Assembly (NCBI GenBank): GCA_965637545.1
Contig: OZ281497.1
Location: 8,246,001 to 8,310,000, forward strand
DNA from: Phallusia mammillata
Lineage: Eukaryota
Direction of reading: 5' to 3'
DNA length: 64,000 nt
In this document: piece after piece, positions 11,268 through 31,290 of the stretch
How positions within the stretch are numbered: position 1 is the stretch's first letter
Layout: each line of letters begins with the position of its first letter
Program-made: the position numbers and the translations under genes
The notes under the pieces: generated by a model
What the model was told of the DNA's origin: nothing
The model's database searches: none
What the model saw: the letters and a program-made list of their open reading frames with translations, nothing else

Positions 11268-12074
11268 ATGGCCGGGAACGGATTTGCAAGATTTATTAGG
11301 CGGTTTGAATCGTACGCCGACAGCATTAAGGCTACTGAAGAGGTAAAAAGGCACCTGTTCTTGTCTACTATTGATGACGAGCTCCGCTGGTTAATACAAG
11401 GCAATTGGACCGTTCCGTATACAACCTGGATTACTCAGTCATGGTCGAGCGGTCTAAAGAACAGTACCGGTTGCGCGTATTTGCACAAACTTCGCCATCG
11501 ATTGATTACACGTCGGGAGATGCCTCGCGAAACGCCCAGAGAATTTGTGCGTGCAATCAGGGAGCTGGGAGACAAAGCGTACCCCAAGAAAAAGGAAGAA
11601 AAGGTCAAGAGAGAAGTAATGTACACTGTGTTGTTGTCTGGACTACTAGATCATAACCTTGCCGCTAACATTTCAAATAGATTAAACCATAAGCGTGACT
11701 TTTGGTCCGCTGCCGAGTTGCTTTTCAACAAACAATCCCCTGCAATTGTCGCAAAAGTCACTACGCCCGTAGAAGACAAACACAATTTTGACAATACTGT
11801 AATTACTACCCTAAATGAGCTGAAGCTGGGTCTGCACAAAAACACAGAGCATTTAACAAGCATTGTTGCGAGTTTGCAAGCCCAGTGCGAGAATTTGCAG
11901 CAACAAGTTCGGACGCTGGCGTTGGCTCAACACCGTTCCGATGTGCGCCCTTCCCGACCCTTAAATCAGCGAAGATGTTTCAGTTGTGGAGAGTCCGGTC
12001 ATCTGCAACGCCAGTGTCACCGTGGTAAAAAAAACGACGCGCTTTTTACGCGGTCCTATGCAACCCGTCGATAA
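11268..12074 (+). CDS. gag: Gypsy Gag with CCHC zinc knuckle
   Basis: 268-aa ORF after the PBS; CFSCGESGHLQRQC knuckle. Confidence 0.85.
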   Translation: MAGNGFARFIRRFESYADSIKATEEVKRHLFLSTIDDELRWLIQGNWTVPYTTWITQSWSSGLKNSTGCAYLHKLRHRLITRREMPRETPREFVRAIRELGDKAYPKKKEEKVKREVMYTVLLSGLLDHNLAANISNRLNHKRDFWSAAELLFNKQSPAIVAKVTTPVEDKHNFDNTVITTLNELKLGLHKNTEHLTSIVASLQAQCENLQQQVRTLALAQHRSDVRPSRPLNQRRCFSCGESGHLQRQCHRGKKNDALFTRSYATRR

Positions 12075-13455
12075 ACAAAACCTTAATTCTTCTTCTGTGC
12101 CCAGAGCAACCTCTAGAGTGGTCCCCACAAAAACGATGATGACTAACGAACGACTCCCAGACTTCCCGACCGTGCGCCCGAAGCAAGTGTTACCTCGGTT
12201 TATTGAGATTGTGCCCGAAAACGTGCCGGTATGTGCTTTGGTAGACACAGGGGCGACTGTATCTTTGTTATCCCAACACCTGTGGCGAAAACTTTCAAAC
12301 GTTGGTAATATAAACCTGGAGTCGTGTTCAACTAATTTTGGTCTGGTCGCTGCAAACGGCACACAGTTGAATTCTCTTGGGATAGCTAATGTAAACATTA
12401 AAGTTGGTGGTCTAACTGTGAGCCACCGATTCTGTGTATGCAACCACCCCGCGCATGAGTGCATCATAGGCCTAAACTTGTTGAAAAGGTATAACTGCTC
12501 TCTTTGCTACAAGACCGCACTAATGACCGCCGGGAAAGCAAGAGTGCCGTTGCTGAACCAGTCTTCTATTCCTGAAGAAAAGGAAGTCTTTCTAGCAGAA
12601 CTGACCCGAGTCCCTGCATCAACGGAGGTGCAAGTGATGGGAGAGTTTCCCCCCGACCGCAACGGTGAGTCTTTGTCTTCATTTACTACCGTGGTTGAAC
12701 GGAACCCAGAATTTACTGCACGATTTGGAGTTCTCACGGCCACCGCTGTTACCACTCCTGCCGGACTAACTGTACCTATACGACTTGCCAATTTAAGTGA
12801 CGACGACGTCGAGTTGCCTGCTGGGCTTAAAGTCGCATGCCTGTACCGGGTGGCAGCTTTTGGCCACGTACAATGTACAATGCATCTCGTGTATTATTAG
12901 GTGCCAATGTTGCTAAATGTAGTTGTAACGACTGTTTGCAGACTTCCAAACCTGAGCAAGTTTCCAGCGTCACACACAAAAGCAGAGGACGGCCAGGCTG
13001 ATGAACATTGGCGAAATATAGTCTCCGGAGTAAATATGAGTGATGAATTGACTGCAGGCCAAAGGCGCAAAGTACTTGAAGTTCTGTCAGCGCATACGCG
13101 CGTCTTTTCTACATCCGCAACTGACCTTGGTAAAACTAGTATTACGCAGCATTTTATTGACACAGGAGACGCTCGACCAGTGCGTCAAGCTCCTAGGAGA
13201 ATGCCGCAACGTCACAAGCACAAGGTTGAAGAGATCATCGACGAAATGCGCAAACAAGGTTTAGTCCGTCCGTCAACGTCTCCCTGGTCCAGTTCAATTG
13301 TCCTTGTGAAAAAAAGTCAGGTGACTTAAGATTTTGTATCGATTATCGTGACCTTAACGCCGTCACCAAAAAGAACAGTTATCCCATACCGCGTATAGAC
13401 GACAGTTTAGACGAGATGGCCGATTCCGTTTATTTCTCCACGCTCGACCTTAAAT
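11986..13455 (+). pseudogene. pol: Gypsy Pol: aspartic protease and N-terminal RT, disrupted
   Basis: ALVDTGATVSLL active site; in-frame TAG at 12898; RT motifs SPWSSSIVLVKK and (after a frameshift ~13320) RFCIDYRDLN...YPIPRIDD...FSTLDLK. The sequence then jumps, with no YxDD and no RNase H. Confidence 0.9.
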
Positions 13456-13572
13456 GTAAAAGGAAGGGTTTGCTGTCGATCAGAGTACACGAGCGTTAGC
13501 TGTTAAAGGAACTTCCATAGTCAGTCCCAATCTTTTGCGTACCTGTGGAAACGGGAACGTGACACCTTCGCT

Positions 13573-14895
13573 ATGCATCCCACTGTTTTAGCCGCGTTGC
13601 ATGCTCAATCTCATGGAGGTGGCCATCTTGGCATTGCGAAAACACTTAGTAAGGTGTCAGAAAAATTTTATTGGGCAAGATGGCGTGACGATGTCGAGCA
13701 GTTTTGTCGCCATTGTGCCGAATGTGCATTAAATAAGAAGCCCAGTACAAAACTGCGCGCATCTTTAGACCCTTCTCCAGAGACTCGGCCTTTAGAACGG
13801 ATTGAGATAGACGTGATGGGTCCTTTTCCTTTGACAAGGATCGGTTACCAGTATGTCCTTGTAGCGTGCGATTTGTTTACAAAGTACGGCCGGGCTTGGC
13901 CAATGCGTCACCAAACAGCGACAGAAACAGCCAATTTGCTGCTTCATCGTTGGCTTACCGTCCACGGCGTCCTCGAGGTAGTCCATTCTGATCAGGGCGG
14001 TAATTTCGAAAGCGCCCTGTTTCAGGAACTAATCCGCCTGATGGGTTGCAAGAAAACCCGAACTACCCCGTACCGGCCTTCGGCAAACGGCTGGGCAGAA
14101 AGGAATAACCGAACATTTTAAACATGCTCCGCAATTATGTTCAACAGGATGGAAAGCAGGGGATGAAGCCTTGTCAGCGGTGGTAGCATCATACAATTCC
14201 AGTCGGCATGAAAGCACTGGCTTCGCTCCCCACTACTTGCTTACAGGATCTCCGTTGCGTCTGCCCGCTGACCTGATACATGCGCCCTCGCCACACGACC
14301 AGCAGTCGCCATTGGTCCACCTGGAAGGACTCGGCTGGCACTTTTCAGGAAAGTGGCACGCGAGACCCTCCAGTGTTAACGCAAGCAAATGGAGAAGCAA
14401 TATAACAGTAAGCAAAGCGGTGACACCTTAAACGTTAACGATTCAGTCTTGTTGGAAAACCCGGTTGTGGCGCCGGACGAACGTAGAAAGTTTCAACTGC
14501 CCTATAAAGACCCTTTTCAGATAATAGAGAAGCAAGGACCTGTCAACTACAAAATTGTTGATCAAACCGGCAAAACCCAAGTAGTGCACTTCAATCGCTT
14601 GAAGAAAACATCTGCCAATTTTGATGAGAACAACAATGGAGATGAAATTGTTGGGAAGCGCCATGAAGAAGATGTCGCTTCACGTGAAGAAGCACGTGGT
14701 ACCAACAAGCCGTTACCAACTGTTGTTGTCCTGGTGATGGTCCCGAGCACCGAAGACGATTCAGGAAAACGCGGTTCTAAACGACCCCTATGCGACAACG
14801 GGTCTGGTTTATCAGCGGACGTGCAGCTTATGAGCGACGCGTTGGAAACTAGACCGAAGAGAATGCGTAAACAGGCGGAATTCTACCAGAGTTAA
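13573..14895 (+). pseudogene. pol: Gypsy integrase, frameshifted
   Basis: HHCC motif (H-x7-GH...C-x2-C), D (IDVMGP), D (HSDQG), E (AERNNR), GPY/F-like C-terminus (PYKDPFQI...VHFNRLK); frameshifts near 14120 and 14340-14390. Confidence 0.9.
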
Positions 14896-15773: not shown

Positions 15774-16211
15774 CATGTAGTTCAAAACTATAGCTTTTAG
15801 GAATGCTCGGAGATGGATTTATCTTGTATTTACACCAAATTAAGATTTGATGACTTTGTTGCTAAATTTGAAACATGCTAACTTTGATGAGGTTGTAATC
15901 TGGAAGGATTTTCATTAATTGCATGACACAGGTATACAACTTGGTTTGTTGTACAAATGAATAAAAGCATGCAACAAGAGTGATCTTGCGAAAACGAGCA
16001 TAAACCAAGTCTTAAACGAACCACAGACGTTGCAAAAAATATTTGATTCAGTACAGTAAATGCGTTATCTCGGAACAGTCTTTATACAGATGTCATCATG
16101 TTAACAAACAAAAACCATTTTACCCGACTAGGTATTGCTCTATCGTATTAGTATATTTTTATTTTACCTTTGACAGCATTCAAAATCAAGCACCAATTTG
16201 TGTAAGTGCCT

Positions 16212-18582
16212 TCACACATAAGTAATAATGTACATTGGATAAACGCTGGCGTCTTTAAATACTACATATAGTTTGGTTTTTTTTATATCATCAACGACAC
16301 TGTTATAGGGTGTTCCGTCTCGCTTGAGGGGTGCGACACTCAGATTGGATTTTCCCAAGCAGTAATGTCCAGTGATAACTTGCGCTAAAATAATGTGACT
16401 GAGTCCGTTTTGATCTGGTTCTGCATAGCCACTTGAGTAAGATGCTGTTGTAGCAAAATACACTCCTTTTCCAAAACGAGTGCCTAAAGGAAAAAATCTT
16501 CGTTTGTATACATGAAATGCTTTTAGTAACAGCTTTTGTTGCTTCGCAGTTGTTAATTGTCAAACCAAGGTTTTTACATAGACTGACATTGACAGAATGT
16601 GACCGCAGGTACTCTTTAGACGAAAATCAAATTGCAGTTTTTACCAACTAGGCCAACTTGTGTTAACAAATCTGTTAATTTGTCTACAAGAAAACGATGA
16701 AACTATAGTAGAACCTGCAAGTAAGCTAATTATTTAATCTAAACAGAAAACTAATTTAGAACGGGTATTAGAACAAAAATTTTTACCATTCTTCCCAGCA
16801 TATCCTTTGTCGAAACCATCCTTACATATTTTTTCTGTAACACCTTTTTGGTTTCCATGGAACAGATTCTGAGTGAATGGGATTTGTGTTAACCCTGAAC
16901 GGAGAAGTTGTTTCGTCACCGTCTCTTTCTGTGCCTTAAATTGTTTGTAGAGGGTGGGATTTTGCACTCTTACAATCTAAAAAATAATAATTTCGCCCCT
17001 TGTTTTCAATTACACAAGTAACAGTAAAAACTCTCGTAAGATAGTAATACTTATGTTATTTGCTATGCAAATCGCTTTTACCCAGCAAATAACCAAATGA
17101 ATTATTTTACCCTTACAACCCTTTTTTGAAGGGTTACTCTAAACTTCTTGTCAACGTCATGATATTCCATTGTATTGTTAGGGACAACGACATTCTTCGA
17201 AATGGAATTGCCCATACCCACCCAGGTATTTGGAAATTCTGAAAAACTGCCTGAAAAACGAATTTTAGTTTTTCTCAAAAAAAAAATGAAATAATAAATG
17301 TTTCTATTTTAATAAATGAGCACTTAATAATGAGATTGTCAGTCTAAACTAGCGTTAGAGACAAGAAGCTTGAAAGGCAATTGGATACACAGACAGACAC
17401 ACAGATGATGTAAAAGTGTATCTACAACAAGCAAATATTTGCAACAACAACCGGCTATTAAACTTTTGCCAGACGAAGATAACATGATTTTACATCCTTT
17501 ACGAAGGCGCAGCAAACAAAACAGTCAATAAAATTTACCTGTATTATAAATGTACGGTAGCACGGTTCGATTCCGAACCGTTCTTTTGAATCGCTGAAAT
17601 AAAATTGACACAATTTTGGGTTTTTCAAAAGAAAACAAACCTGATTTCTAAGATCCTTGTTTTTTCATAGCCAGTCACATGAAAAATGTAGGTCATGAAC
17701 GCAAAAAACAAACAAATTGAATTGAACTCACCACGTTTAAGCAACAGCTTTTAATTTTTCCCCAGGGTGTTTCGTCCCCATATAATGAATCTGGTTTATA
17801 ATTTAATGCAAATTGGTTTGTTTTTTAACTTAAATTAACATCGGCATACCTAACTCTGCTTTCCAACCGGGACAACAGCTAAAAGAGCTAAAGAGCCAAG
17901 CCCCAATACTATAGCCGTAACCTGTTCCGAGCCCCACGGTTCCAAATGCAATTGGGAAAATAACAAAACCGATGAAATATAAAGAACCTACATAGATGAA
18001 TAAATTGGTTATAAAACAAATTTCACAGAAACCAGAGTCTTGCAAAGCACTTACTTGATAGTATAGTTGTAAACCTCAAAGATAGTTTACAGTTTTCTTT
18101 TCTTTTGCAAAAATACAAAATGAACAGAAACAAAGAAACAAACTGTGTTAAAATACCAAGAAGCATCATGGCAGCTACAGCTCTTCTTTCATGAGTTTGA
18201 AGATCTGAGCAACTGTACAGAAAAAAAACATAACCTTTCCCTTTTGCAAGCGGTTGCGGTATTTACTGGAAATATGTGTATATAATAGCAGGAGTATTGG
18301 TTATTTCTCAAAATCGTCTTGTAAAGATTACAACTACTAAGTTTCTAAAACTTGCAATAAGTGCTTCTCCAAATGCTGTTTCGACAGAAACAATTGTTTA
18401 CAAGTTATATTCTTACCGTTAGGAATGGCCATACATGAATCATTTTCGCACAAAACGAACAGTCCCAGTGAACGGTTTTCATCTAACCATTGTGGTGAAG
18501 ATACAGCTGCTATTGCAAAACATAATGAAACTACGATAAATACTCCAGCTAGCAAATAGTGCACTTTCGGAGATAATTTCAT
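16212..18582 (-). CDS. Claudin/PMP22-like tetraspan - PARP-family mono-ADP-ribosyltransferase fusion, 8 exons, 385 aa (copy A, apparently intact)
   Basis: Exons 18582-18417, 18204-18055, 17987-17850, 17790-17732, 17593-17539, 17238-17111, 16976-16787, 16483-16212. All introns are GT-AG with matching phases, total 1158 nt with no internal stop. N-terminal W...GLF..C....C claudin signature and four hydrophobic segments; C-terminal FPNTW...EY..V...RVQN...LFHG...GVYFA...KLYVVF...YPMYII PARP core. Confidence 0.88.
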
Positions 18583-19407: not shown

Positions 19408-19971
19408 NNNNNNNNNNNNNNNNNNNNNNNNNNNNNNNNNNNNNNNNNNNNNNNNNNNNNNNNNNNNNNNNNNNNNNNNNNNNNNNNNNNNNNNNNNNNN
19501 NNNNNNNNNNNNNNNNNNNNNNNNNNNNNNNNNNNNNNNNNNNNNNNNNNNNNNNNNNNNNNNNNNNNNNNNNNNNNNNNNNNNNNNNNNNNNNNNNNNN
19601 NNNNNNNNNNNNNNNNNNNNNNNNNNNNNNNNNNNNNNNNNNNNNNNNNNNNNNNNNNNNNNNNNNNNNNNNNNNNNNNNNNNNNNNNNNNNNNNNNNNN
19701 NNNNNNNNNNNNNNNNNNNNNNNNNNNNNNNNNNNNNNNNNNNNNNNNNNNNNNNNNNNNNNNNNNNNNNNNNNNNNNNNNNNNNNNNNNNNNNNNNNNN
19801 NNNNNNNNNNNNNNNNNNNNNNNNNNNNNNNNNNNNNNNNNNNNNNNNNNNNNNNNNNNNNNNNNNNNNNNNNNNNNNNNNNNNNNNNNNNNNNNNNNNN
19901 NNNNNNNNNNNNNNNNNNNNNNNNNNNNNNNNNNNNNNNNNNNNNNNNNNNNNNNNNNNNNNNNNNNNNNN
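19408..19971. other. Assembly gap (564 N)
   Basis: Run of N; the ORF-track call 19403-20044 is an artefact of it. Confidence 1.
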
Positions 19972-24290: not shown

Positions 24291-24765
24291 TCGACGAAAG
24301 ACTGTTCATTTACATAAGAATGGACTTTATTTGCATAAGTGCCACGTTAAATTTGTAAAGCCTATCTTGTTCATTAAAAGGTAACCGTCAGTACAACGCA
24401 TTTCCTGACTGTAGTGACCTGGTACATAATTGCAACCCACAATGAGAAATGTTTTATGAGGTTTTGATGCTGGTGAAACAGTGTATTGAGTTTTAATGTT
24501 GGCTTAGGCATGTTCATTAGAAACAGTTTAAATCATGGTTCTTCAGCGGGGGCGAAATCGCACACCGAGAAGGCGATGGTAAAAATTTTGGGAGTCGGGA
24601 AGCAATTTCAACATGATTAATTGTATTAATATATAAAAGAACTGCGAGCCTCAGTCAACTTTAACTAGCGAGTAGATTTGATGCATATCAGCCTAAACAT
24701 GCTGCTACTTGAGTACATTGAGTTTTTGTAATCAGATGATATACTTAGAATTACCTGTTATTCAA

Positions 24766-26217
24766 ATGGCCATTTTATTATTGTTGGTTGCATTCTGCCT
24801 GACTGCTTTTGGGGAGGCAAAACCTTGGAATACTTTTGGAGGATTTCAATATTTTGTCGAAATGACTCCAGTAAATGGGTATGCACAAGCGGAGATGGGT
24901 TGCTCCGCGTTGCAATCTAATATATCTAATATTAAAACTACAGAAATCTTTGACTTCGTCAACTCTCTTATGAATCTGACAACAGGTGAGTTGTTGCAAT
25001 ACGGTAAAACACAAAAAAATCAATAGAAGCGAAAAAAGTCGATTAACCAGTAACATTATTTAAAGGCAAGACATCAATTTTTTTATATTTTAAACCATAC
25101 AATAACTGTATCTCAGAAAGTTTGTACACATTCTACATTGGTGCAAAAAGAATCAACGGCACAAAGAAGTTTGAGTGGAGTGATGGAAGCGAAGTTTTGG
25201 TTCCAAGTACTATGTGGAAAGTAGGACAACCAAACAACAAAATCGGAAACGAGTTTCAAAGGTTCCAGTGGACCCCCTACACCGTACGGCTGGTTTGATG
25301 TACCGTGCTATCATTTTGCGGGATTTATTTGTGAGAAAGCCGTACCAGGTAACCAGAGTGATGTATGAGAAAACACAAACTGAAGTTAAAGCAATATACT
25401 GTGAATGATAAAGTAAGAATTGCTGTTCATTAGAAAAAGAAATTGGCTGCATTTTTTAAAAAGAATAATCTGCTAAACTTAACACATTGTAGCACATGCT
25501 TTCATCAATGTTTCGTTGTTGTTTCCTGTAGATCTTTCGTTTTTTTTTTTCAGGTTTTACTTCCGAAAGTGAAAACGGTAATTTCATCCTAACTGTTATA
25601 TTAGCAGTATTTATTTGGTGGCCTAATGTTCGCTATAATTTGCACTCTCGTTGTGGTAATGACGTTGCGAAGACGTAAACAAAGGTAATCATCTGCTTTG
25701 TGACAACCTATATAATTTATGATTATTCAAGTTCGACTAACCTTTATATGCAAATTATTACCACACAACACATTGTTCAAAGATGGCGAGTTAGGTTGAG
25801 TTAATTGGTAAACTGGATGGTTGTAAGGATTCATACATTTGTAAAAATGTTAACAGAGGGCTAGGCAACAATGTTTTATTCATAGATTTAGAAGATGAAA
25901 CTATGATTGCTGATTTTTTTCTGGTACAGATGAGTGCATTGAATAACTTTGTTTTACAGAGTTGAAGTAGAACGTGAACCAGTATATGAAAACGTTTTAG
26001 GTAAGTTGAATGTTTGAACCATAACAAAGAAATAAATAAACAAATCAAAAAATATTAATTTAAAGAGCTGCCATAGATTTTTCGTTAAAAGAAATTACCT
26101 ACTTTGCATTTAATTAAATATCATTTTGCCACGTGCAACAAAACAGGGCTTCGCCATGCCGAAGAAGAAGTGCACAACTTTTAGGAAGTTGAGACCGATG
26201 CCTCGCAAAGAATCTGA
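24766..26217 (+). pseudogene. C-type lectin receptor copy L2
   Basis: Exons 24766-24985, 25117-~25348, 25554-25684, 25960-26000, 26147-26217. A 17-nt deletion removes EDCVVM (stop at 25296), a 4-nt duplication disrupts the TM exon, and there is a TAG at 26182. Confidence 0.88.
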
Positions 26218-27116: not shown

Positions 27117-28037
27117 CATTGGTTCTTAACCGGGGTTCGATCGAACCCCAGGGGTTCGGTAACGCCGAATCAGAAGTACAATACAAATAAAAGTACAATA
27201 TTTTGAAGTACAATACAAATACAGTTTTTGTCAAACTTTAGGGTCTATAGTCTAGAAACGGCTAAAAACGGCAATTTGTATTTGCTCAATATCAAAACAC
27301 TTGAAAGATAAACTGATGCAGGGATGTTTTGAACTGCTCTAACAGTTTTTGTGGTACTTAAAAGAGTATTACTGGCCTAATAACCATATGTGTCAGACTT
27401 TTTGCACGCCTATTGTGTGCCAACAATGCGAACAAAACAGGACATCATAAACACTTCTCCTCGCTGTGCAGATCAATCTCTGCACCAAGCTAAAAATTAA
27501 TCTGGGCTTTTTGGGCGCTATTAGATGGTAAATACATCATATAAACCAAGTATTTTTATACAAAAAAAGCAGGTAATTGGCGGCCGTTGGTGAAATAAGA
27601 ATCTGCGATGCGACTGTCTTAGCAAAATGGTTGTGCACCCCTGCATTAAGGTTTTATTTCCCTTTTTTGACGTAACAAAGAGCATCGTTCGCGCTGTTCG
27701 TAAGCAGAAAAACAACGAAACTTTGTTGGCAGCAAAAACTTATCATTACTTCATCTTTTATATGTTTGTGTACTTATGCTAAAAATATACAATGCTTCAT
27801 TTGGGTAAAAACTAAAAATTGCCGAAATTAAAGCAATCATGAAACAAGTTGGTAATATTATTATGTCAGAATTTAACAAAATGAAAAACAGTAAATCTTG
27901 CCATTACGTTTAGTCAAAAGTTAATAATGACCCACAAAACAAATGGGTTAAAAACCTAGGATGTAACTTTGGGTTTTCGACCCAAGGCTGAAGAATATGG
28001 CAGGGGTTCGGCCGTTATGAAAAGTTAAGAACCACTG
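27117..28037. mobile_element. hAT-type non-autonomous element (921 bp)
   Basis: TIR cattggttcttaac / gttaagaaccactg; perfect TSD ctctatgg (27109-27116, 28038-28045); empty site at ~16138 in the paralogous block. Confidence 0.92.
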
Positions 28038-28111
28038 CTCTATGGTATTAGTATATTTTTATTTTACTTTTAACAGCATTCAAGATCAAGCAGCAATGTG
28101 TGTAAGTGCCT

Positions 28112-29935
28112 TCACACATAAGTAATAATGTACATTGGATAAACGCTGGCGTCTTTCAATACTACATATAGTTTGGGATCTTGCTTCTCATCAACGACAC
28201 TGTTATATGTTGTTCCGTCTCGTTTGATGGGTGCGACACTCAGATTGGATGTTCCCAAGCAATAATGTCCAGTGATAACTTCAGCCAAAATAATGTGCCT
28301 GAGTCCGTTTTGATCTGGTGCTGCATAGTCACTTGAGTAAGATGCTGTTGTAGCAAAGTACACTCCTTTTTCAAAACGAGTGCCTGCAAGAAAAAAGTTT
28401 TTGTTTGTATACATGAAATGCTTTCAGTAACAGCTTTTGTTTCTTCGCAGTTGTTAAACCAAAGATTTTACAAGGACTGCCATTTGCAAAAGGCGGCCAC
28501 AGCTAGTTTTAGTTACTTTAAACCTTGGTCAACTTGTTTTAACAAATCTGTTTATTGGTCTACAAATAAACGATGGAAATGTGGTTGAACCTGCAAGGAA
28601 GCTAATTTTGTTAATTCTTACAAAAAATAATTAAGAATGGGTATTAGAACATCAAATTGTTACCGTTCCTTCCTGCATATCCTTTGTCGAAACCATCCTT
28701 ACATATTTTTTCTACATCATCTTTTCGTGTTCCATGGAAAAGGTCCTGAGTGAGTGGAATGTGCGCTAAACCAGAAATGCGAAATTTGTCGTCTTTGCAT
28801 GTTTCTGTGCTACGAATTGCTTGTACAGCGTGGAATTTTGCACCCTTTCAATCTAAAAAAATAATTTTGCTCCTTGTCTTTATTTACACAAGAGTAACAG
28901 TAAAACCGCTTCTAAGAGAGTAATAATTTAGTTATTTGGAATGCAAATCGCTTTTATCCAGCAAAAAAACAAATGAACATTTATCACCCCTTTTTTAAGT
29001 TTTTTTTTCAAACTTGATGCAAACGTCGTTATATTCCTTTGTATTGTTGGGGACGGGGACATTCTTCCAAATGTCATTGCCCATATTCACCCACGTACTT
29101 GGATATTCTGAAAAAATTCTTTTCAAAATTGTTCCCTCGGACACAACATGGGGAATTTTAGTTTAAAAATATCAGAATAACACATGTTTCAATCTTTATA
29201 AATCAGTATTTATTATTCAGATTGTCAAGCTCAACTACTGTTAGAGATGAAAAGCTTGAAAGGCAAGTGGATACACAGATAGACCTACATATTGTTTAAA
29301 AGTGTACCTGCAGCAAGGAATTAGTTACTGCAACAACAACCGGCGTTTCAGATATAATTATTGTGCTCGGTAAAAACTCGATACTCAATACCATTTACCT
29401 GCATTGTGTTCTCGATTTCGAACCTTTCGTGTGAGTGGCTGAAATGAATTTGACACAATTTATACAATTCTGGATGCAAAATGCATGATGTGATGTACGC
29501 AGCAAATCAAAAACTTGCACTTACCACGCTTAAGCAACAGCTTTTAATTTTTCTCCAGGGCGTTTCGTTTATATCTGTTTTCCAATTTAATTTCAGTTGA
29601 CTGGATTTTGATTTTTTTTTGTATTAACATCAACATACCTAATTTGGCGTTCCACCCGGTGCAACAACTTAAAATACTAAAACCACAAGCCCACATACTG
29701 TATCTGAAACCCGAACCAAGAGACAAGCGATCTGGTAAATCTTCGAAACCACCTTCACTTACCAAAGCAACAACAATACCAGTTGAACATAGGAAACCTA
29801 CATACAGCATAAGTGGAAATTATCTAAAATAAGAGATTTTACAGTAATTAAAGTTGAAAAGAACCTGCTTGTTGCAATAGTTGTAACTAACATAGATAGT
29901 TTACGAGATTTGTAGACTTTGCACGAAAATGCGAT
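28112..29935 (-). pseudogene. Tetraspan-PARP fusion copy B, 5'-truncated and frameshifted
   Basis: Exon2 3' part ~29935-29869 (donor GC), then exons 29797-29639, 29574-29525, 29438-29399, 29107-~28980 (TAA, lost donor), 28852-28664 (1-nt deletion) and 28383-28112 (open). Exon 1 is absent. Confidence 0.88.
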
Positions 29936-30212
29936 TTTAACTTGTATGTTTCACATTTATCGAGTAGTTACGAAATAAACAAATACTTAACCATTTGTTT
30001 TGACACCAATGTAAGCAAGCCTACGTTTGTGTTTTGTGTATTATTTGACAAGGGAGACGCACAATAGCGCAACTGCAACTCACCGTTTTACAAATTCTTC
30101 AAACGTATGTTTAGGTTTCTAAACACAAAGTTTCTGAATATTATTTGATAGTGTTCAACTTAGTTTCAAAATATTGCGATTAGAAACTACTCGGGTGAAG
30201 GAAATAATGCTC

Positions 30213-30241: not shown

Positions 30242-31290
30242 AAGCGTCTCGTGAACTTTATAAAGCGTTTAACGCCAATACAACGTATTTCCTGACTGTA
30301 GTCACCAGCCAGCCAGCTATAATTGCAATCCACAATAGGAAATATATTATGAGGTCTTGATGCTGATAAACATTTCTTGATAGTATACTGATTTTTAGTA
30401 TCGGCTGAGGCAAGAGTTTTAATGAAAGGAACGAGATATGTAGCTATTTATCTATCTATTTGTTAAATCTCTTTTCCTTAAGCTCTATTTAACTATTTGT
30501 TGAAAAATACTTTTAAATACTTTTAATTAAAATATTAAATACACATGTGGTTAAGTTGTTATTGTGTGTGTTTTTTTTTTGCACAAATTGCCGACAAGTA
30601 CAAGCAGTGGCTTCAATATATAAACACGTTTGTTATGAGCAATTGACTTAACTACAGTTTTTGTAATCAGATGACAATCTTTCTGTTCTTCAAATGGCCA
30701 TTTTAGCTTTGTTGGTTGCATTCAGTCTGATTGCTTTTGCGGAGGCAAAAACTTGGAATACTTTTAAAGGATTTCAATATTTTGTCGAAATGGCCCCAGT
30801 CAATACGTATGCACAAGCGGAGATGGGTTGCGCCGCATTGCAATCGAACATATCTAATATTAAAACTGTAGAAATCTTCAACTTTGTCAATTCTCGAATA
30901 AATCTAACAGGTGAGTTTTGTGTATGCACATAAAACTAAAAAAAGACACGTCGACTAGTTTCTGATATATTTTAAACCATGTAATAACTATTCGTTTTTT
31001 TTTTAGAAAGCTTGTTCTCATTTTACATTGGTGCAAAAAGAATCAACAGCACAGAGAATTTTGAGTGGATTGATGGAAGCGAAGTTTTGGTTCCAAGCAC
31101 TAAGTGGAACGAAGTGCAACCAAACAACAAAATCGAGAACGAAGACTGTGTTGTGATGAGTTTCAAAGGTTCTAATGTACCCCATCGTAAGGCTGGTTTG
31201 ACGTAGCGTGCAATAATCATACTGCGGGGTTTGTTTGTGAAAAAGCTGCACCAGGTAATCAAAGTGATGTATGAGAAAACATAAACACAA

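What the first reader, a model, noticed from the sequence alone, without database searches (positions are those of the whole stretch)
16212..18582. Claudin/PMP22-like tetraspan fused to a mono-ADP-ribosyltransferase (PARP) domain
Seen: eight GT-AG exons join in phase into a 385-aa frame. The order is TM1 + W-GLF-C-C loop (SPQWLDENRSLGLFVLCENDSC), TM2, TM3-loop-TM4 (SLYFIGFVIFPIAF...GYGYSIGAW), a Cys/basic linker, then a complete PARP core. The ORF track hides this as unrelated fragments. Established: the W-GLW-C-C signature defines the claudin/PMP22/EMP superfamily. H (LFHG), Y (GVYFA) and Leu at the catalytic-Glu position (KLYVVF) match the H-Y-L mono-ART type of PARP14/15. Inference: a tetraspan C-terminus is cytoplasmic, so this would be a junctional or surface membrane protein wired directly to intracellular ADP-ribosylation. 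I do not know this architecture from characterised PARPs.
Basis: partly seen in the sequence, partly recalled or inferred. Interest (0 to 1): 0.92.

Follow-up and report, generated by a model that had tools for sequence, protein, structure and literature searches.

The report
Membrane-anchored PARP gene model, sea squirt
In this sea-squirt genome, eight short exons can be joined into one protein with a claudin-like membrane anchor and a PARP14/15-type ADP-ribosylating enzyme domain, but no RNA data show that the two halves are made as one protein.

Summary
On the minus strand, eight GT-AG exons (18582 to 16212) join in phase into a 382-389 aa frame. The length depends on two alternative splice sites at exon 6.

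The C-terminal three exons are a complete PARP14/15-type catalytic domain. Exon 8 alone passes the Pfam threshold, PARP15 matches at E 5e-16, and the H-Y-L residues align. Intron positions and phases match WWE-PARP loci from another assembly, so this is a shuffled catalytic cassette.

The N-terminal part has three strong hydrophobic helices and one weak one. Its first two exons point to the claudin superfamily only at lead level. The third exon is unrecognised.

The fusion is unproven. No RNA run holds the locus. No protein with this architecture turned up in the searches. Intron 1 must use the second of two nearby AGs.

In favour:
- Introns are 59-303 nt.
- The only AATAAA follows the PARP stop codon.
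- All relevant junctions are phase 1.
- A tandem paralog at 29941-28036 keeps the exon order with in-frame indels. That copy starts mid exon 2 and is disrupted.

Verdict: a plausible lineage-specific chimeric gene. If real, it is a new variant of membrane-tethered mono-ADP-ribosyltransferases. This scan had already noted the paralog and another orphan PARP cassette in this genome.

The parts
18417..18582 (-). Exon 1: ATG, TM1 (aa ~9-30), start of extracellular loop 1 with W32, G40-L-F, C45, C50 and two N-x-S sequons (N36, N47)
   Evidence: In-frame TAA 12 nt upstream of the ATG. Weak GSG-1 hit at E 0.13 and MOSMO at E 0.84. Nearest named Atlas clusters are all in the claudin clan, 0.77-0.92.
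18055..18204 (-). Exon 2: end of loop 1, TM2 (aa ~64-88), basic intracellular loop KRKENCKLSLR. Its acceptor is the second of two AGs (18213 and 18205).
   Evidence: Claudin_2 at E 0.022 and MARVEL at E 0.016, both below threshold. Claudin-clan Atlas clusters at 0.78-0.84.
17850..17987 (-). Exon 3: TM3 (aa ~101-125), a very short loop, a weak TM4 (GYGYSIGAWLFSSFSCC), and a juxtamembrane CC
   Evidence: No family hit. The paralog keeps the frame with a 21-nt insertion.
17732..17790 (-). Exon 4: linker DSLYGDETPWGKIKSCCLNV, with no Met
   Evidence: 88% nt identity to the paralog against about 70% in the flanking introns. A 9-nt in-frame indel and conserved splice sites.
17539..17593 (-). Exon 5: basic linker RFKRTVRNRTVLPYIYNT, with no Met
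   Evidence: Splice sites are conserved in the paralog, with a 15-nt in-frame deletion.
17111..17250 (-). Exon 6: start of the PARP catalytic cassette (FPNTW..M..EYHDV..F). Alternative acceptor at 17238 and alternative donor at 17120.
   Evidence: Aligns with the exon-6-like exon of L002. Same phase-1 acceptor as in L001 and L002.
16787..16976 (-). Exon 7: PARP, IVRVQNPTLY...LFHG (catalytic His-Gly)
   Evidence: Pfam PARP at E 0.004. PARP14 structure at E 4e-06 with LFHG aligned.
16212..16483 (-). Exon 8: PARP, GKGVYFA (Tyr), ASYS, KLYVVF (Leu at the Glu position), stop at 16214-16212
   Evidence: Pfam PARP at 40.2 bits, E 3.5e-10. PARP15 at E 5e-16 with the residues aligned.
16158..16163 (-). 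AATAAA poly(A) signal, 49 nt after the stop. It is the only canonical one on this strand between 16000 and 18700.
28036..29941 (-). Tandem paralog B. It is collinear from mid exon 2 to the 3' UTR at 72% nt identity. It lacks exon 1 and TM1. It has a TAA at 28997-28995, a 1-nt deletion near 28787, and an exon-2 donor that is out of phase.

Best explanation
This is a lineage-specific chimeric gene made by phase-1 exon shuffling. The last three exons of a PARP14-like (WWE-PARP) gene, which form the whole catalytic domain, came to lie behind the exons of a small claudin-like multi-pass membrane protein, and they are spliced to it through two short linker exons.

The predicted product is about 385-389 aa. 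It has a short N-terminus in the cytosol, TM1, a small glycosylatable loop with two Cys, TM2, a basic loop, TM3, a minimal loop, a weak TM4, a Cys-rich basic juxtamembrane linker (possibly palmitoylated), and an H-Y-L mono-ADP-ribosyltransferase domain facing the cytosol. It would mono-ADP-ribosylate substrates at a membrane surface.

Shown: the exon anatomy, the PARP identity and residues, and the cassette's origin. Inferred: joint transcription, topology, enzymatic activity and any biological role.
For: - Eight in-phase GT-AG exons with mostly strong GTRAGT-like donors give one open frame of 1170 nt.
- Introns are 59-303 nt, so there is no room for a normal intergenic region.
- The only AATAAA follows the PARP stop.
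- Linker exons 4 and 5 contain no Met, so if they are coding they need upstream exons.
- Exon 4 is more conserved than its flanking introns (88% against about 70%). All three indels in exons 3-5 of the paralog are multiples of 3.
- The paralog has far fewer stops in this frame than unconstrained change predicts: 1 observed against about 9 expected, P 0.0004, or 0.03 if only half of the changes fell on it.
- dN/dS is similar for the membrane+linker part and the PARP part, at 0.66 and 0.62.
- The PARP cassette has the same three exons and phases as the WWE-PARP loci L001 and L002. Its phase-1 acceptor matches the phase-1 donors of exons 1, 2, 3 and 5.
- The PARP residues H, Y and L align with PARP14/15.
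- The positive-inside pattern (5 K/R in the TM2-TM3 loop, 8 after TM4) and the N-x-S sequons confined to loop 1 fit a cytosolic PARP domain.
Against: - No transcript evidence. The species-labelled RNA runs hold none of the locus, and four of them, laid on it, gave zero contigs.
- No protein with this architecture was found among the 150 best of 2538 PARP hits in 1.84 billion representatives, nor in the word-based searches. Length filters and the lack of a reference for the spliced protein limited these searches.
- Intron 1 needs the second of two AGs 8 nt apart. The first gives a stop.
- TM4 is weak.
- Phase compatibility between the two halves has a 1-in-3 prior.
- Exon identity to the paralog is not generally above intron identity, and the paralog is truncated and disrupted.
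- Another note of this scan (s1-358907) reports the same kind of orphan PARP cassette beside an unrelated kinase gene. Such juxtapositions therefore recur in this genome and need not be spliced.
Confidence: 0.55

Rival explanations
1. There are two transcription units. A small claudin-like membrane protein gene (exons 1-3 or 1-5, about 158-195 aa) is followed closely by a stand-alone or spliced-leader trans-spliced PARP catalytic gene. That gene would start at the Met of WVGMGNS in exon 6. Ascidians have operons and trans-splicing (my background knowledge, not tested here).
For: - Read-through of the exon-3 donor stops after 6 codons and gives a 158-aa protein, the usual size of PMP22/claudin-like proteins. 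Read-through of exon 5 stops after 5 codons, and the stop is conserved in the paralog.
- ATTAAA variants lie in intron 3 and in intron 5, about 55 nt before the exon-6 acceptor.
- The first ATG after the exon-6 acceptor is in frame.
- The PARP cassette occurs next to unrelated genes elsewhere in this genome (s1-358907).
Against: - The Met in exon 6 is the conserved 'W..M' residue of this PARP family, not a start signal. A protein starting there would lose the conserved FPxxW segment.
- There is no canonical AATAAA between the two halves.
- The exon-5 donor CAG|GTAAAT is strong and is conserved in the paralog.
- About 0.7 ATTAAA or AATAAA are expected by chance in a 288-nt AT-rich intron (my estimate).
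Confidence: 0.25
2. This is a silent or decaying chimeric locus. A segmental duplication placed a PARP cassette behind a fragment of a membrane-protein gene. The open frame is young or fortuitous, and no functional protein is made.
For: - No RNA support.
- The sister copy is truncated and carries a nonsense codon and a frameshift.
- Exon identity is about the same as intron identity for most segments, and dN/dS is about 0.65.
- TM4 is degenerate, and exon 3 is not recognised by any family method.
- A retroelement lies 1.3 kb downstream.
Against: - Copy A keeps 389 codons open with all catalytic residues and 14 canonical splice sites, despite 8-38% nucleotide divergence from B across the exons.
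- Copy B has fewer stops than neutral decay predicts, and its indels in exons 3-5 are in frame.
Confidence: 0.15
3. The fusion protein is real but spans the membrane only three times, because TM4 does not insert. The PARP domain would then be lumenal or extracellular, like an ecto-ADP-ribosyltransferase.
For: The TM4 segment scores only 0.7-1.0 on Kyte-Doolittle over 15-19 residues. The loop before it is about 8 residues.
Against: - There are eight K/R in the 46 residues after TM4, which argues for a cytosolic side by the positive-inside rule.
- The PARP domain carries free Cys and has no signal-type features.
- All characterised PARP-family enzymes work on the cytosolic or nuclear side (background knowledge).
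Confidence: 0.05

Closest known systems
PARP14 / PARP15 catalytic domain (clade 3 mono-ADP-ribosyltransferases, H-Y-L)
   Same: This is the best structural-sequence match, at E 5e-16 for the last exon. His-Gly, Tyr and Leu align. The closest representatives, P0005, P0006 and P0011, are KH-macro-WWE-PARP14-like proteins at 50-54% identity. The three-exon structure is the same as in the WWE-PARP loci L001 and L002.
   Different: There are no macro, KH or WWE domains. A multi-pass membrane segment and a 37-aa Cys/basic linker take their place. It is not an orthologue of PARP14.
PARP16 (tail-anchored ER mono-ART) and catalogued N-terminal-TM clade-3 PARPs (a sponge PARP12-like protein and Rhizaria proteins; PMC4245714, PMC3372510)
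   Same: A PARP-family mono-ART is held at a membrane with the catalytic domain in the cytosol. Predicted N-terminally anchored PARPs, P0042, P0056 and P0123, are also among the hits here.
   Different: PARP16 has a single C-terminal anchor and belongs to clade 6. The catalogued N-terminal anchors are described only as a transmembrane domain, with no claudin-like part. Here the anchor is a 3-4-pass claudin-like segment.
Claudin / PMP22 / EMP / MOSMO / GSG1L / clarin superfamily of tetraspans
   Same: It shares a short N-terminus and TM1, followed by a loop with Trp, G-L-aromatic and two Cys. It also has TM2, a basic loop, and juxtamembrane Cys pairs of the kind that are palmitoylated in claudins (background knowledge). 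The weak hits all fall in this clan.
   Different: All hits are below threshold. Phe replaces the motif Trp, and the Cys-Cys spacing is 4. Loop 2 is about 8 residues, TM4 is short and weak, and exon 3 is unrecognised.

Membership tests
PARP catalytic domain (Pfam PF00644) | Profile match above the curated threshold | tested here: met
   Exon 8 alone scores 40.2 bits against a cutoff of 26.7, E 3.5e-10. Exon 7 adds 17.1 bits.
PARP14/15-type active mono-ART (H-Y-L/I) | His-Gly of the NAD+ site, Tyr of G-x-Y-F-A, and Leu/Ile at the position of the poly-ART Glu | tested here: met
   LFHG aligns with PARP14 LFHG. GVYFA aligns with GTYFA and KLYVVF with KLFVVF of PARP15.
PARP14/15-type active mono-ART (H-Y-L/I) | ADP-ribosyltransferase activity | not testable with these tools
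   Needs a recombinant domain, NAD+, and a His-to-Ala control.
PARP14 orthologue (macro-PARP) | Macro, KH and WWE domains upstream of the catalytic domain | tested here: not met
   No such Pfam hits in exons 1, 2, 3 and 6; exons 4 and 5, under 20 aa, could not be scanned. By eye, no recognisable macro or WWE segment among the minus-strand stop-free segments between 18583 and 28035; these were not scanned against Pfam. The relatives L001 and L002 do carry WWE-like exons, again judged by eye.
Claudin/PMP22 superfamily (PF00822, PF13903 and clan) | Profile match above the curated threshold | tested here: inconclusive
   Only single exons could be submitted. Claudin_2 scores 15 bits (cutoff 29.1), GSG-1 12.5 bits (cutoff 27), and MARVEL is an equal rival. 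The spliced protein has no reference, so the whole-domain test was left out.
Claudin/PMP22 superfamily | Four transmembrane helices with both termini cytosolic | tested here: inconclusive
   There are three strong hydrophobic segments (KD above 1.9). The fourth scores 0.7-1.0. The charge distribution fits N-in/C-in.
   W32 is present. The rest reads G-L-F-V-L-C-E-N-D-S-C, with Phe in place of Trp and only 4 residues between the Cys, which is shorter than I recall for claudins. It has the general W...GL[aromatic]..C..C shape only.
Claudin/PMP22 superfamily | Language-model or fold resemblance | tested here: inconclusive
   For exons 1 and 2, the nearest named clusters are all in the claudin clan, at scores of 0.77-0.92 (lead level). 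Exon 3 gave no usable hit. No structure could be predicted for the spliced protein.
Single fused gene (one mRNA) | Reads or cDNA that join exons 3-4-5-6 | tested here: inconclusive
   The only two runs holding the stretch hold 97% of its sampled words, introns included, so I take them for genomic DNA; none is on record as RNA. Four RNA-labelled runs of the species laid zero contigs.

The most novel reading that the evidence does not exclude
The gene is expressed as modelled. It gives a claudin-like four-pass membrane protein whose cytosolic tail is an active PARP14-type mono-ADP-ribosyltransferase. That would be the first tetraspan-anchored PARP. It sits in a duplicating cluster with C-type lectin genes, which suggests a membrane-proximal immune or stress signalling enzyme that arose in ascidians by exon shuffling.
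Probability: 0.4. Interest if true: 0.6.

Novelty: new variant of a known kind. Interest (0 to 1): 0.42.

Why it matters
If the fusion is real, the promiscuous PARP14-type catalytic cassette can be wired straight to a multi-pass surface-type membrane protein. This would add a membrane-proximal mode of intracellular mono-ADP-ribosylation beside tail-anchored PARP16. It would also be a clean, recent example of phase-1 exon shuffling in a chordate relative. Together with the other orphan PARP cassettes noted in this genome, it suggests that ascidians are experimenting with PARP domain fusions, possibly in immune gene clusters. If the fusion is not real, the locus is a cautionary case of in-phase exon chaining across neighbouring units.

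Tried and rejected
- RNA support. One run search and one read-laying run were allowed, and no RNA run holds the locus. This is uninformative rather than negative.
- Whole-protein searches. The spliced 389-aa protein has no reference, so I did not type it in. Pfam, structure prediction, DeepTMHMM-like analysis and length-matched homologue searches on the full protein were therefore left out. Exons were searched one at a time.
- Scaffold search. To bypass the length filter I aligned exons 7 and 8 to a 419-aa scaffold (P0056, alignment A2). This returned only relatives of the scaffold, which are diatom and protist PARPs. It found no protein from this genome and no claudin+PARP architecture.
- Word searches. 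The search with exon 8 gave two ORF fragments from one ENA assembly, and their loci are WWE-PARP, not tetraspan-PARP. The search with exon 1 found nothing.
- A nine-row alignment of all the exon pieces (A1) was too scattered to use.
- A larger PARP14-like gene with the membrane exons nested in an intron. I rejected this because no macro or WWE-like segment was apparent by eye on the minus strand between the two copies.
- The paralog as strong proof of the architecture. I downgraded this. The paralog starts in mid exon 2, is disrupted, and its exons are mostly no more conserved than its introns.

Full report
**1. Observation**

The feature lies on the minus strand. I rebuilt the exon chain in a script. 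The exons are 18582-18417, 18204-18055, 17987-17850, 17790-17732, 17593-17539, 17250-17111, 16976-16787 and 16483-16212.

Every intron is GT-AG and the phases fit. The chain is 1170 nt, which gives 389 aa plus a TGA stop. Exon 6 has a second in-frame acceptor 12 nt downstream (17238), and this is the only one present in the paralog. It also has a second in-frame donor 9 nt upstream (17120).

An in-frame TAA lies 12 nt before the ATG. The only canonical AATAAA on this strand between 16000 and 18700 lies 49 nt after the stop. Introns are 59-303 nt.

There is one weak joint. Intron 1 ends in two AGs 8 nt apart. Only the second (18205) keeps the frame, and the first (18213) runs into a stop after 12 codons.

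**2. The PARP half**

Pfam scans of single exons give PF00644 at 40.2 bits for exon 8 (cutoff 26.7, E 3.5e-10) and 17.1 bits for exon 7.

Against solved structures, exon 8 matches PARP15 and PARP14 at E 5e-16 to 2e-15. It matches PARP10 and PARP12 more weakly. Exon 7 matches PARP14 at E 4e-06.

The alignments pair these residues:
- LFHG with LFHG
- GVYFA with GTYFA
- ASYS with ASYS
- KLYVVF with KLFVVF

The H-Y-L reading therefore holds.

An exhaustive HMMER search with exon 8 against 1.84 billion representatives found 2538 hits. Among hits with a single matched stretch, the closest are P0005, P0006 and P0011 at 50-54% identity. These are KH-macro-WWE-PARP14-like proteins.

A word search with exon 8 found two ORF fragments at 54-56% identity on large contigs of one ENA assembly. 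I fetched their loci, L001 and L002. Both carry the same three-exon catalytic cassette with identical intron positions and phases: a phase-1 acceptor before the 'P..W' exon, then phase 0, then phase 1. Upstream they carry WWE-like exons, judged by eye, and not membrane exons.

Exons 6-8 here are therefore a PARP14-lineage catalytic cassette that has lost its WWE partner.

**3. The membrane half**

Kyte-Doolittle scanning gives three strong segments, at aa 8-30, 64-88 and 101-125. The proposed fourth helix, GYGYSIGAWLFSSFSCC, scores only 0.7-1.0.

Several features fit an N-in, C-in four-pass topology with the PARP domain in the cytosol:
- Loop 1 has the two N-x-S sequons.
- The TM2-TM3 loop has five K/R.
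- The 46 residues after TM4 have eight K/R and a second Cys-Cys pair.

TM4 insertion is inferred, not shown.

Family evidence exists only at lead level:
- Exon 1 hits GSG-1 at E 0.13 and the claudin-like MOSMO structure at E 0.84.
- Exon 2 hits Claudin_2 at E 0.022, but MARVEL equally well at E 0.016.
- For exons 1 and 2, the nearest named clusters by language-model features are all in the claudin clan: claudin, clarin, LHFPL, MOSMO and CACNG, at scores of 0.77-0.92.
- Exon 3 is recognised by nothing.

The loop-1 motif is W-x7-G-L-F-x2-C-x4-C. Phe replaces the Trp of the W-GLW-C-C motif, and the Cys spacing is shorter than I recall for claudins, so only the general shape is kept.

I therefore call this a claudin-like anchor with an atypical second half. 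I do not call it a claudin or PMP22 family member.

**4. Is it one gene?**

Direct evidence is missing. The only two runs that hold the stretch hold 97% of its sampled words, introns included. I take them for genomic DNA, and none is on record as RNA. All species-labelled RNA runs show 0.00. Four of them, from four studies, laid no contig on 16000-18800.

Indirect evidence in favour:
- The gene is compact, with a single AATAAA after the PARP stop.
- Donors are strong at every exon end.
- The donors of exons 1, 2, 3 and 5 and the ancestral cassette acceptor are all phase 1. This is the classic condition for exon shuffling.
- Exons 4 and 5 have no Met, so they can be coding only as internal exons.

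The tandem paralog B (29941-28036) is collinear with A from mid exon 2 to 75 nt past the stop, at 72% nt identity. Its splice sites for exons 3-8 are conserved. The three indels in exons 3, 4 and 5 are 21, 9 and 15 nt, all in frame, while intron indels are not. Exon 4 is 88% identical against about 70% in the flanking introns.

In A's reading frame, B has one stop where about 9 would be expected from unconstrained change (P 0.0004). If only half of the differences fell on B, about 5 would be expected (P 0.03). For the membrane+linker exons alone, the figures are 0 observed against 4.5 expected (P 0.006), or against 2.7 expected (P 0.06).

dN/dS between the copies is 0.66 for the membrane+linker exons and 0.62 for the PARP exons.

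Evidence against:
- B lacks exon 1 and half of exon 2.
- B has a CAA-to-TAA change at 28997-28995 and a 1-nt deletion near 28787, and its exon-2 donor is out of phase.
- Apart from exon 4, exons are no more alike than introns. Exon 8 and the 3' UTR are both 92%, which looks like gene conversion.
- Splicing exon 3 directly to exon 6 would also be in frame, so the phase match between the halves carries only a 1-in-3 prior.

**5. Comparison with known systems**

No protein with a claudin-like domain plus PARP appeared among the 150 best representatives. None appeared in the scaffold search either.

PARPs with simple N-terminal hydrophobic anchors do occur, namely P0042, P0056 and P0123. Pfam finds only PF00644 in them.

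The literature records PARP16 as tail-anchored (PMC3372510). It also records a sponge PARP12-like protein with an N-terminal TM domain, and TM-bearing clade-3 PARPs in Rhizaria (PMC4245714).

Membrane tethering of mono-ARTs is therefore known. A multi-pass claudin-like tether was not found in any source I could search.

**6. Verdict**

The best explanation, at about 0.55, is a young ascidian chimeric gene that encodes a membrane-tethered PARP14-type mono-ART. The rivals are:
- two adjacent units, possibly operon-like (0.25)
- a silent or decaying chimera (0.15)
- a three-pass topology with a lumenal PARP domain (0.05)

- The spliced protein could not be submitted anywhere as a whole, because it has no reference.
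- No eukaryotic genome or transcriptome collection was searchable for orthologues.
- The N run at 19408-19971 was left untouched.

Noticed in passing
window 11268-14895 (+): Long ORFs that look like the gag, protease and reverse-transcriptase/integrase of an LTR-type retroelement. They lie 1.3 kb beyond the 3' end of the gene. I only describe them here.
   Followed up: no
window ~24709-25026 (+) and ~30690-30760 (+): Two similar signal-peptide exons (MAIL..LVAF..AEAK.WNTF) of C-type-lectin-like genes, each upstream of one PARP copy. The lectin and PARP units seem to have been duplicated together.
   Followed up: partly
window 28036-29941 (-): Paralog B starts in mid exon 2. It has a TAA at 28997-28995 and a 1-nt deletion near 28787. 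Even so, it keeps in-frame indels and few stops, so it was probably coding until recently, perhaps with a different 5' end.
   Followed up: yes
L001:670-10297 and L002:2836-10336: Contigs of ENA assembly ERZ25067576 carry WWE-like exons followed by the same three-exon PARP cassette. Intron phases are identical and introns are 2-2.5 kb. The organism was not identified.
   Followed up: partly
P0001, P0002, P0003, P0008: The top representative hits are predicted proteins with two or three tandem PARP catalytic domains. These are either tandem gene arrays merged by gene prediction or true multi-PARP proteins.
   Followed up: no
window 19408-19971: A 564-base run of N between the gene and the next features. 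It was left as it is.
   Followed up: no
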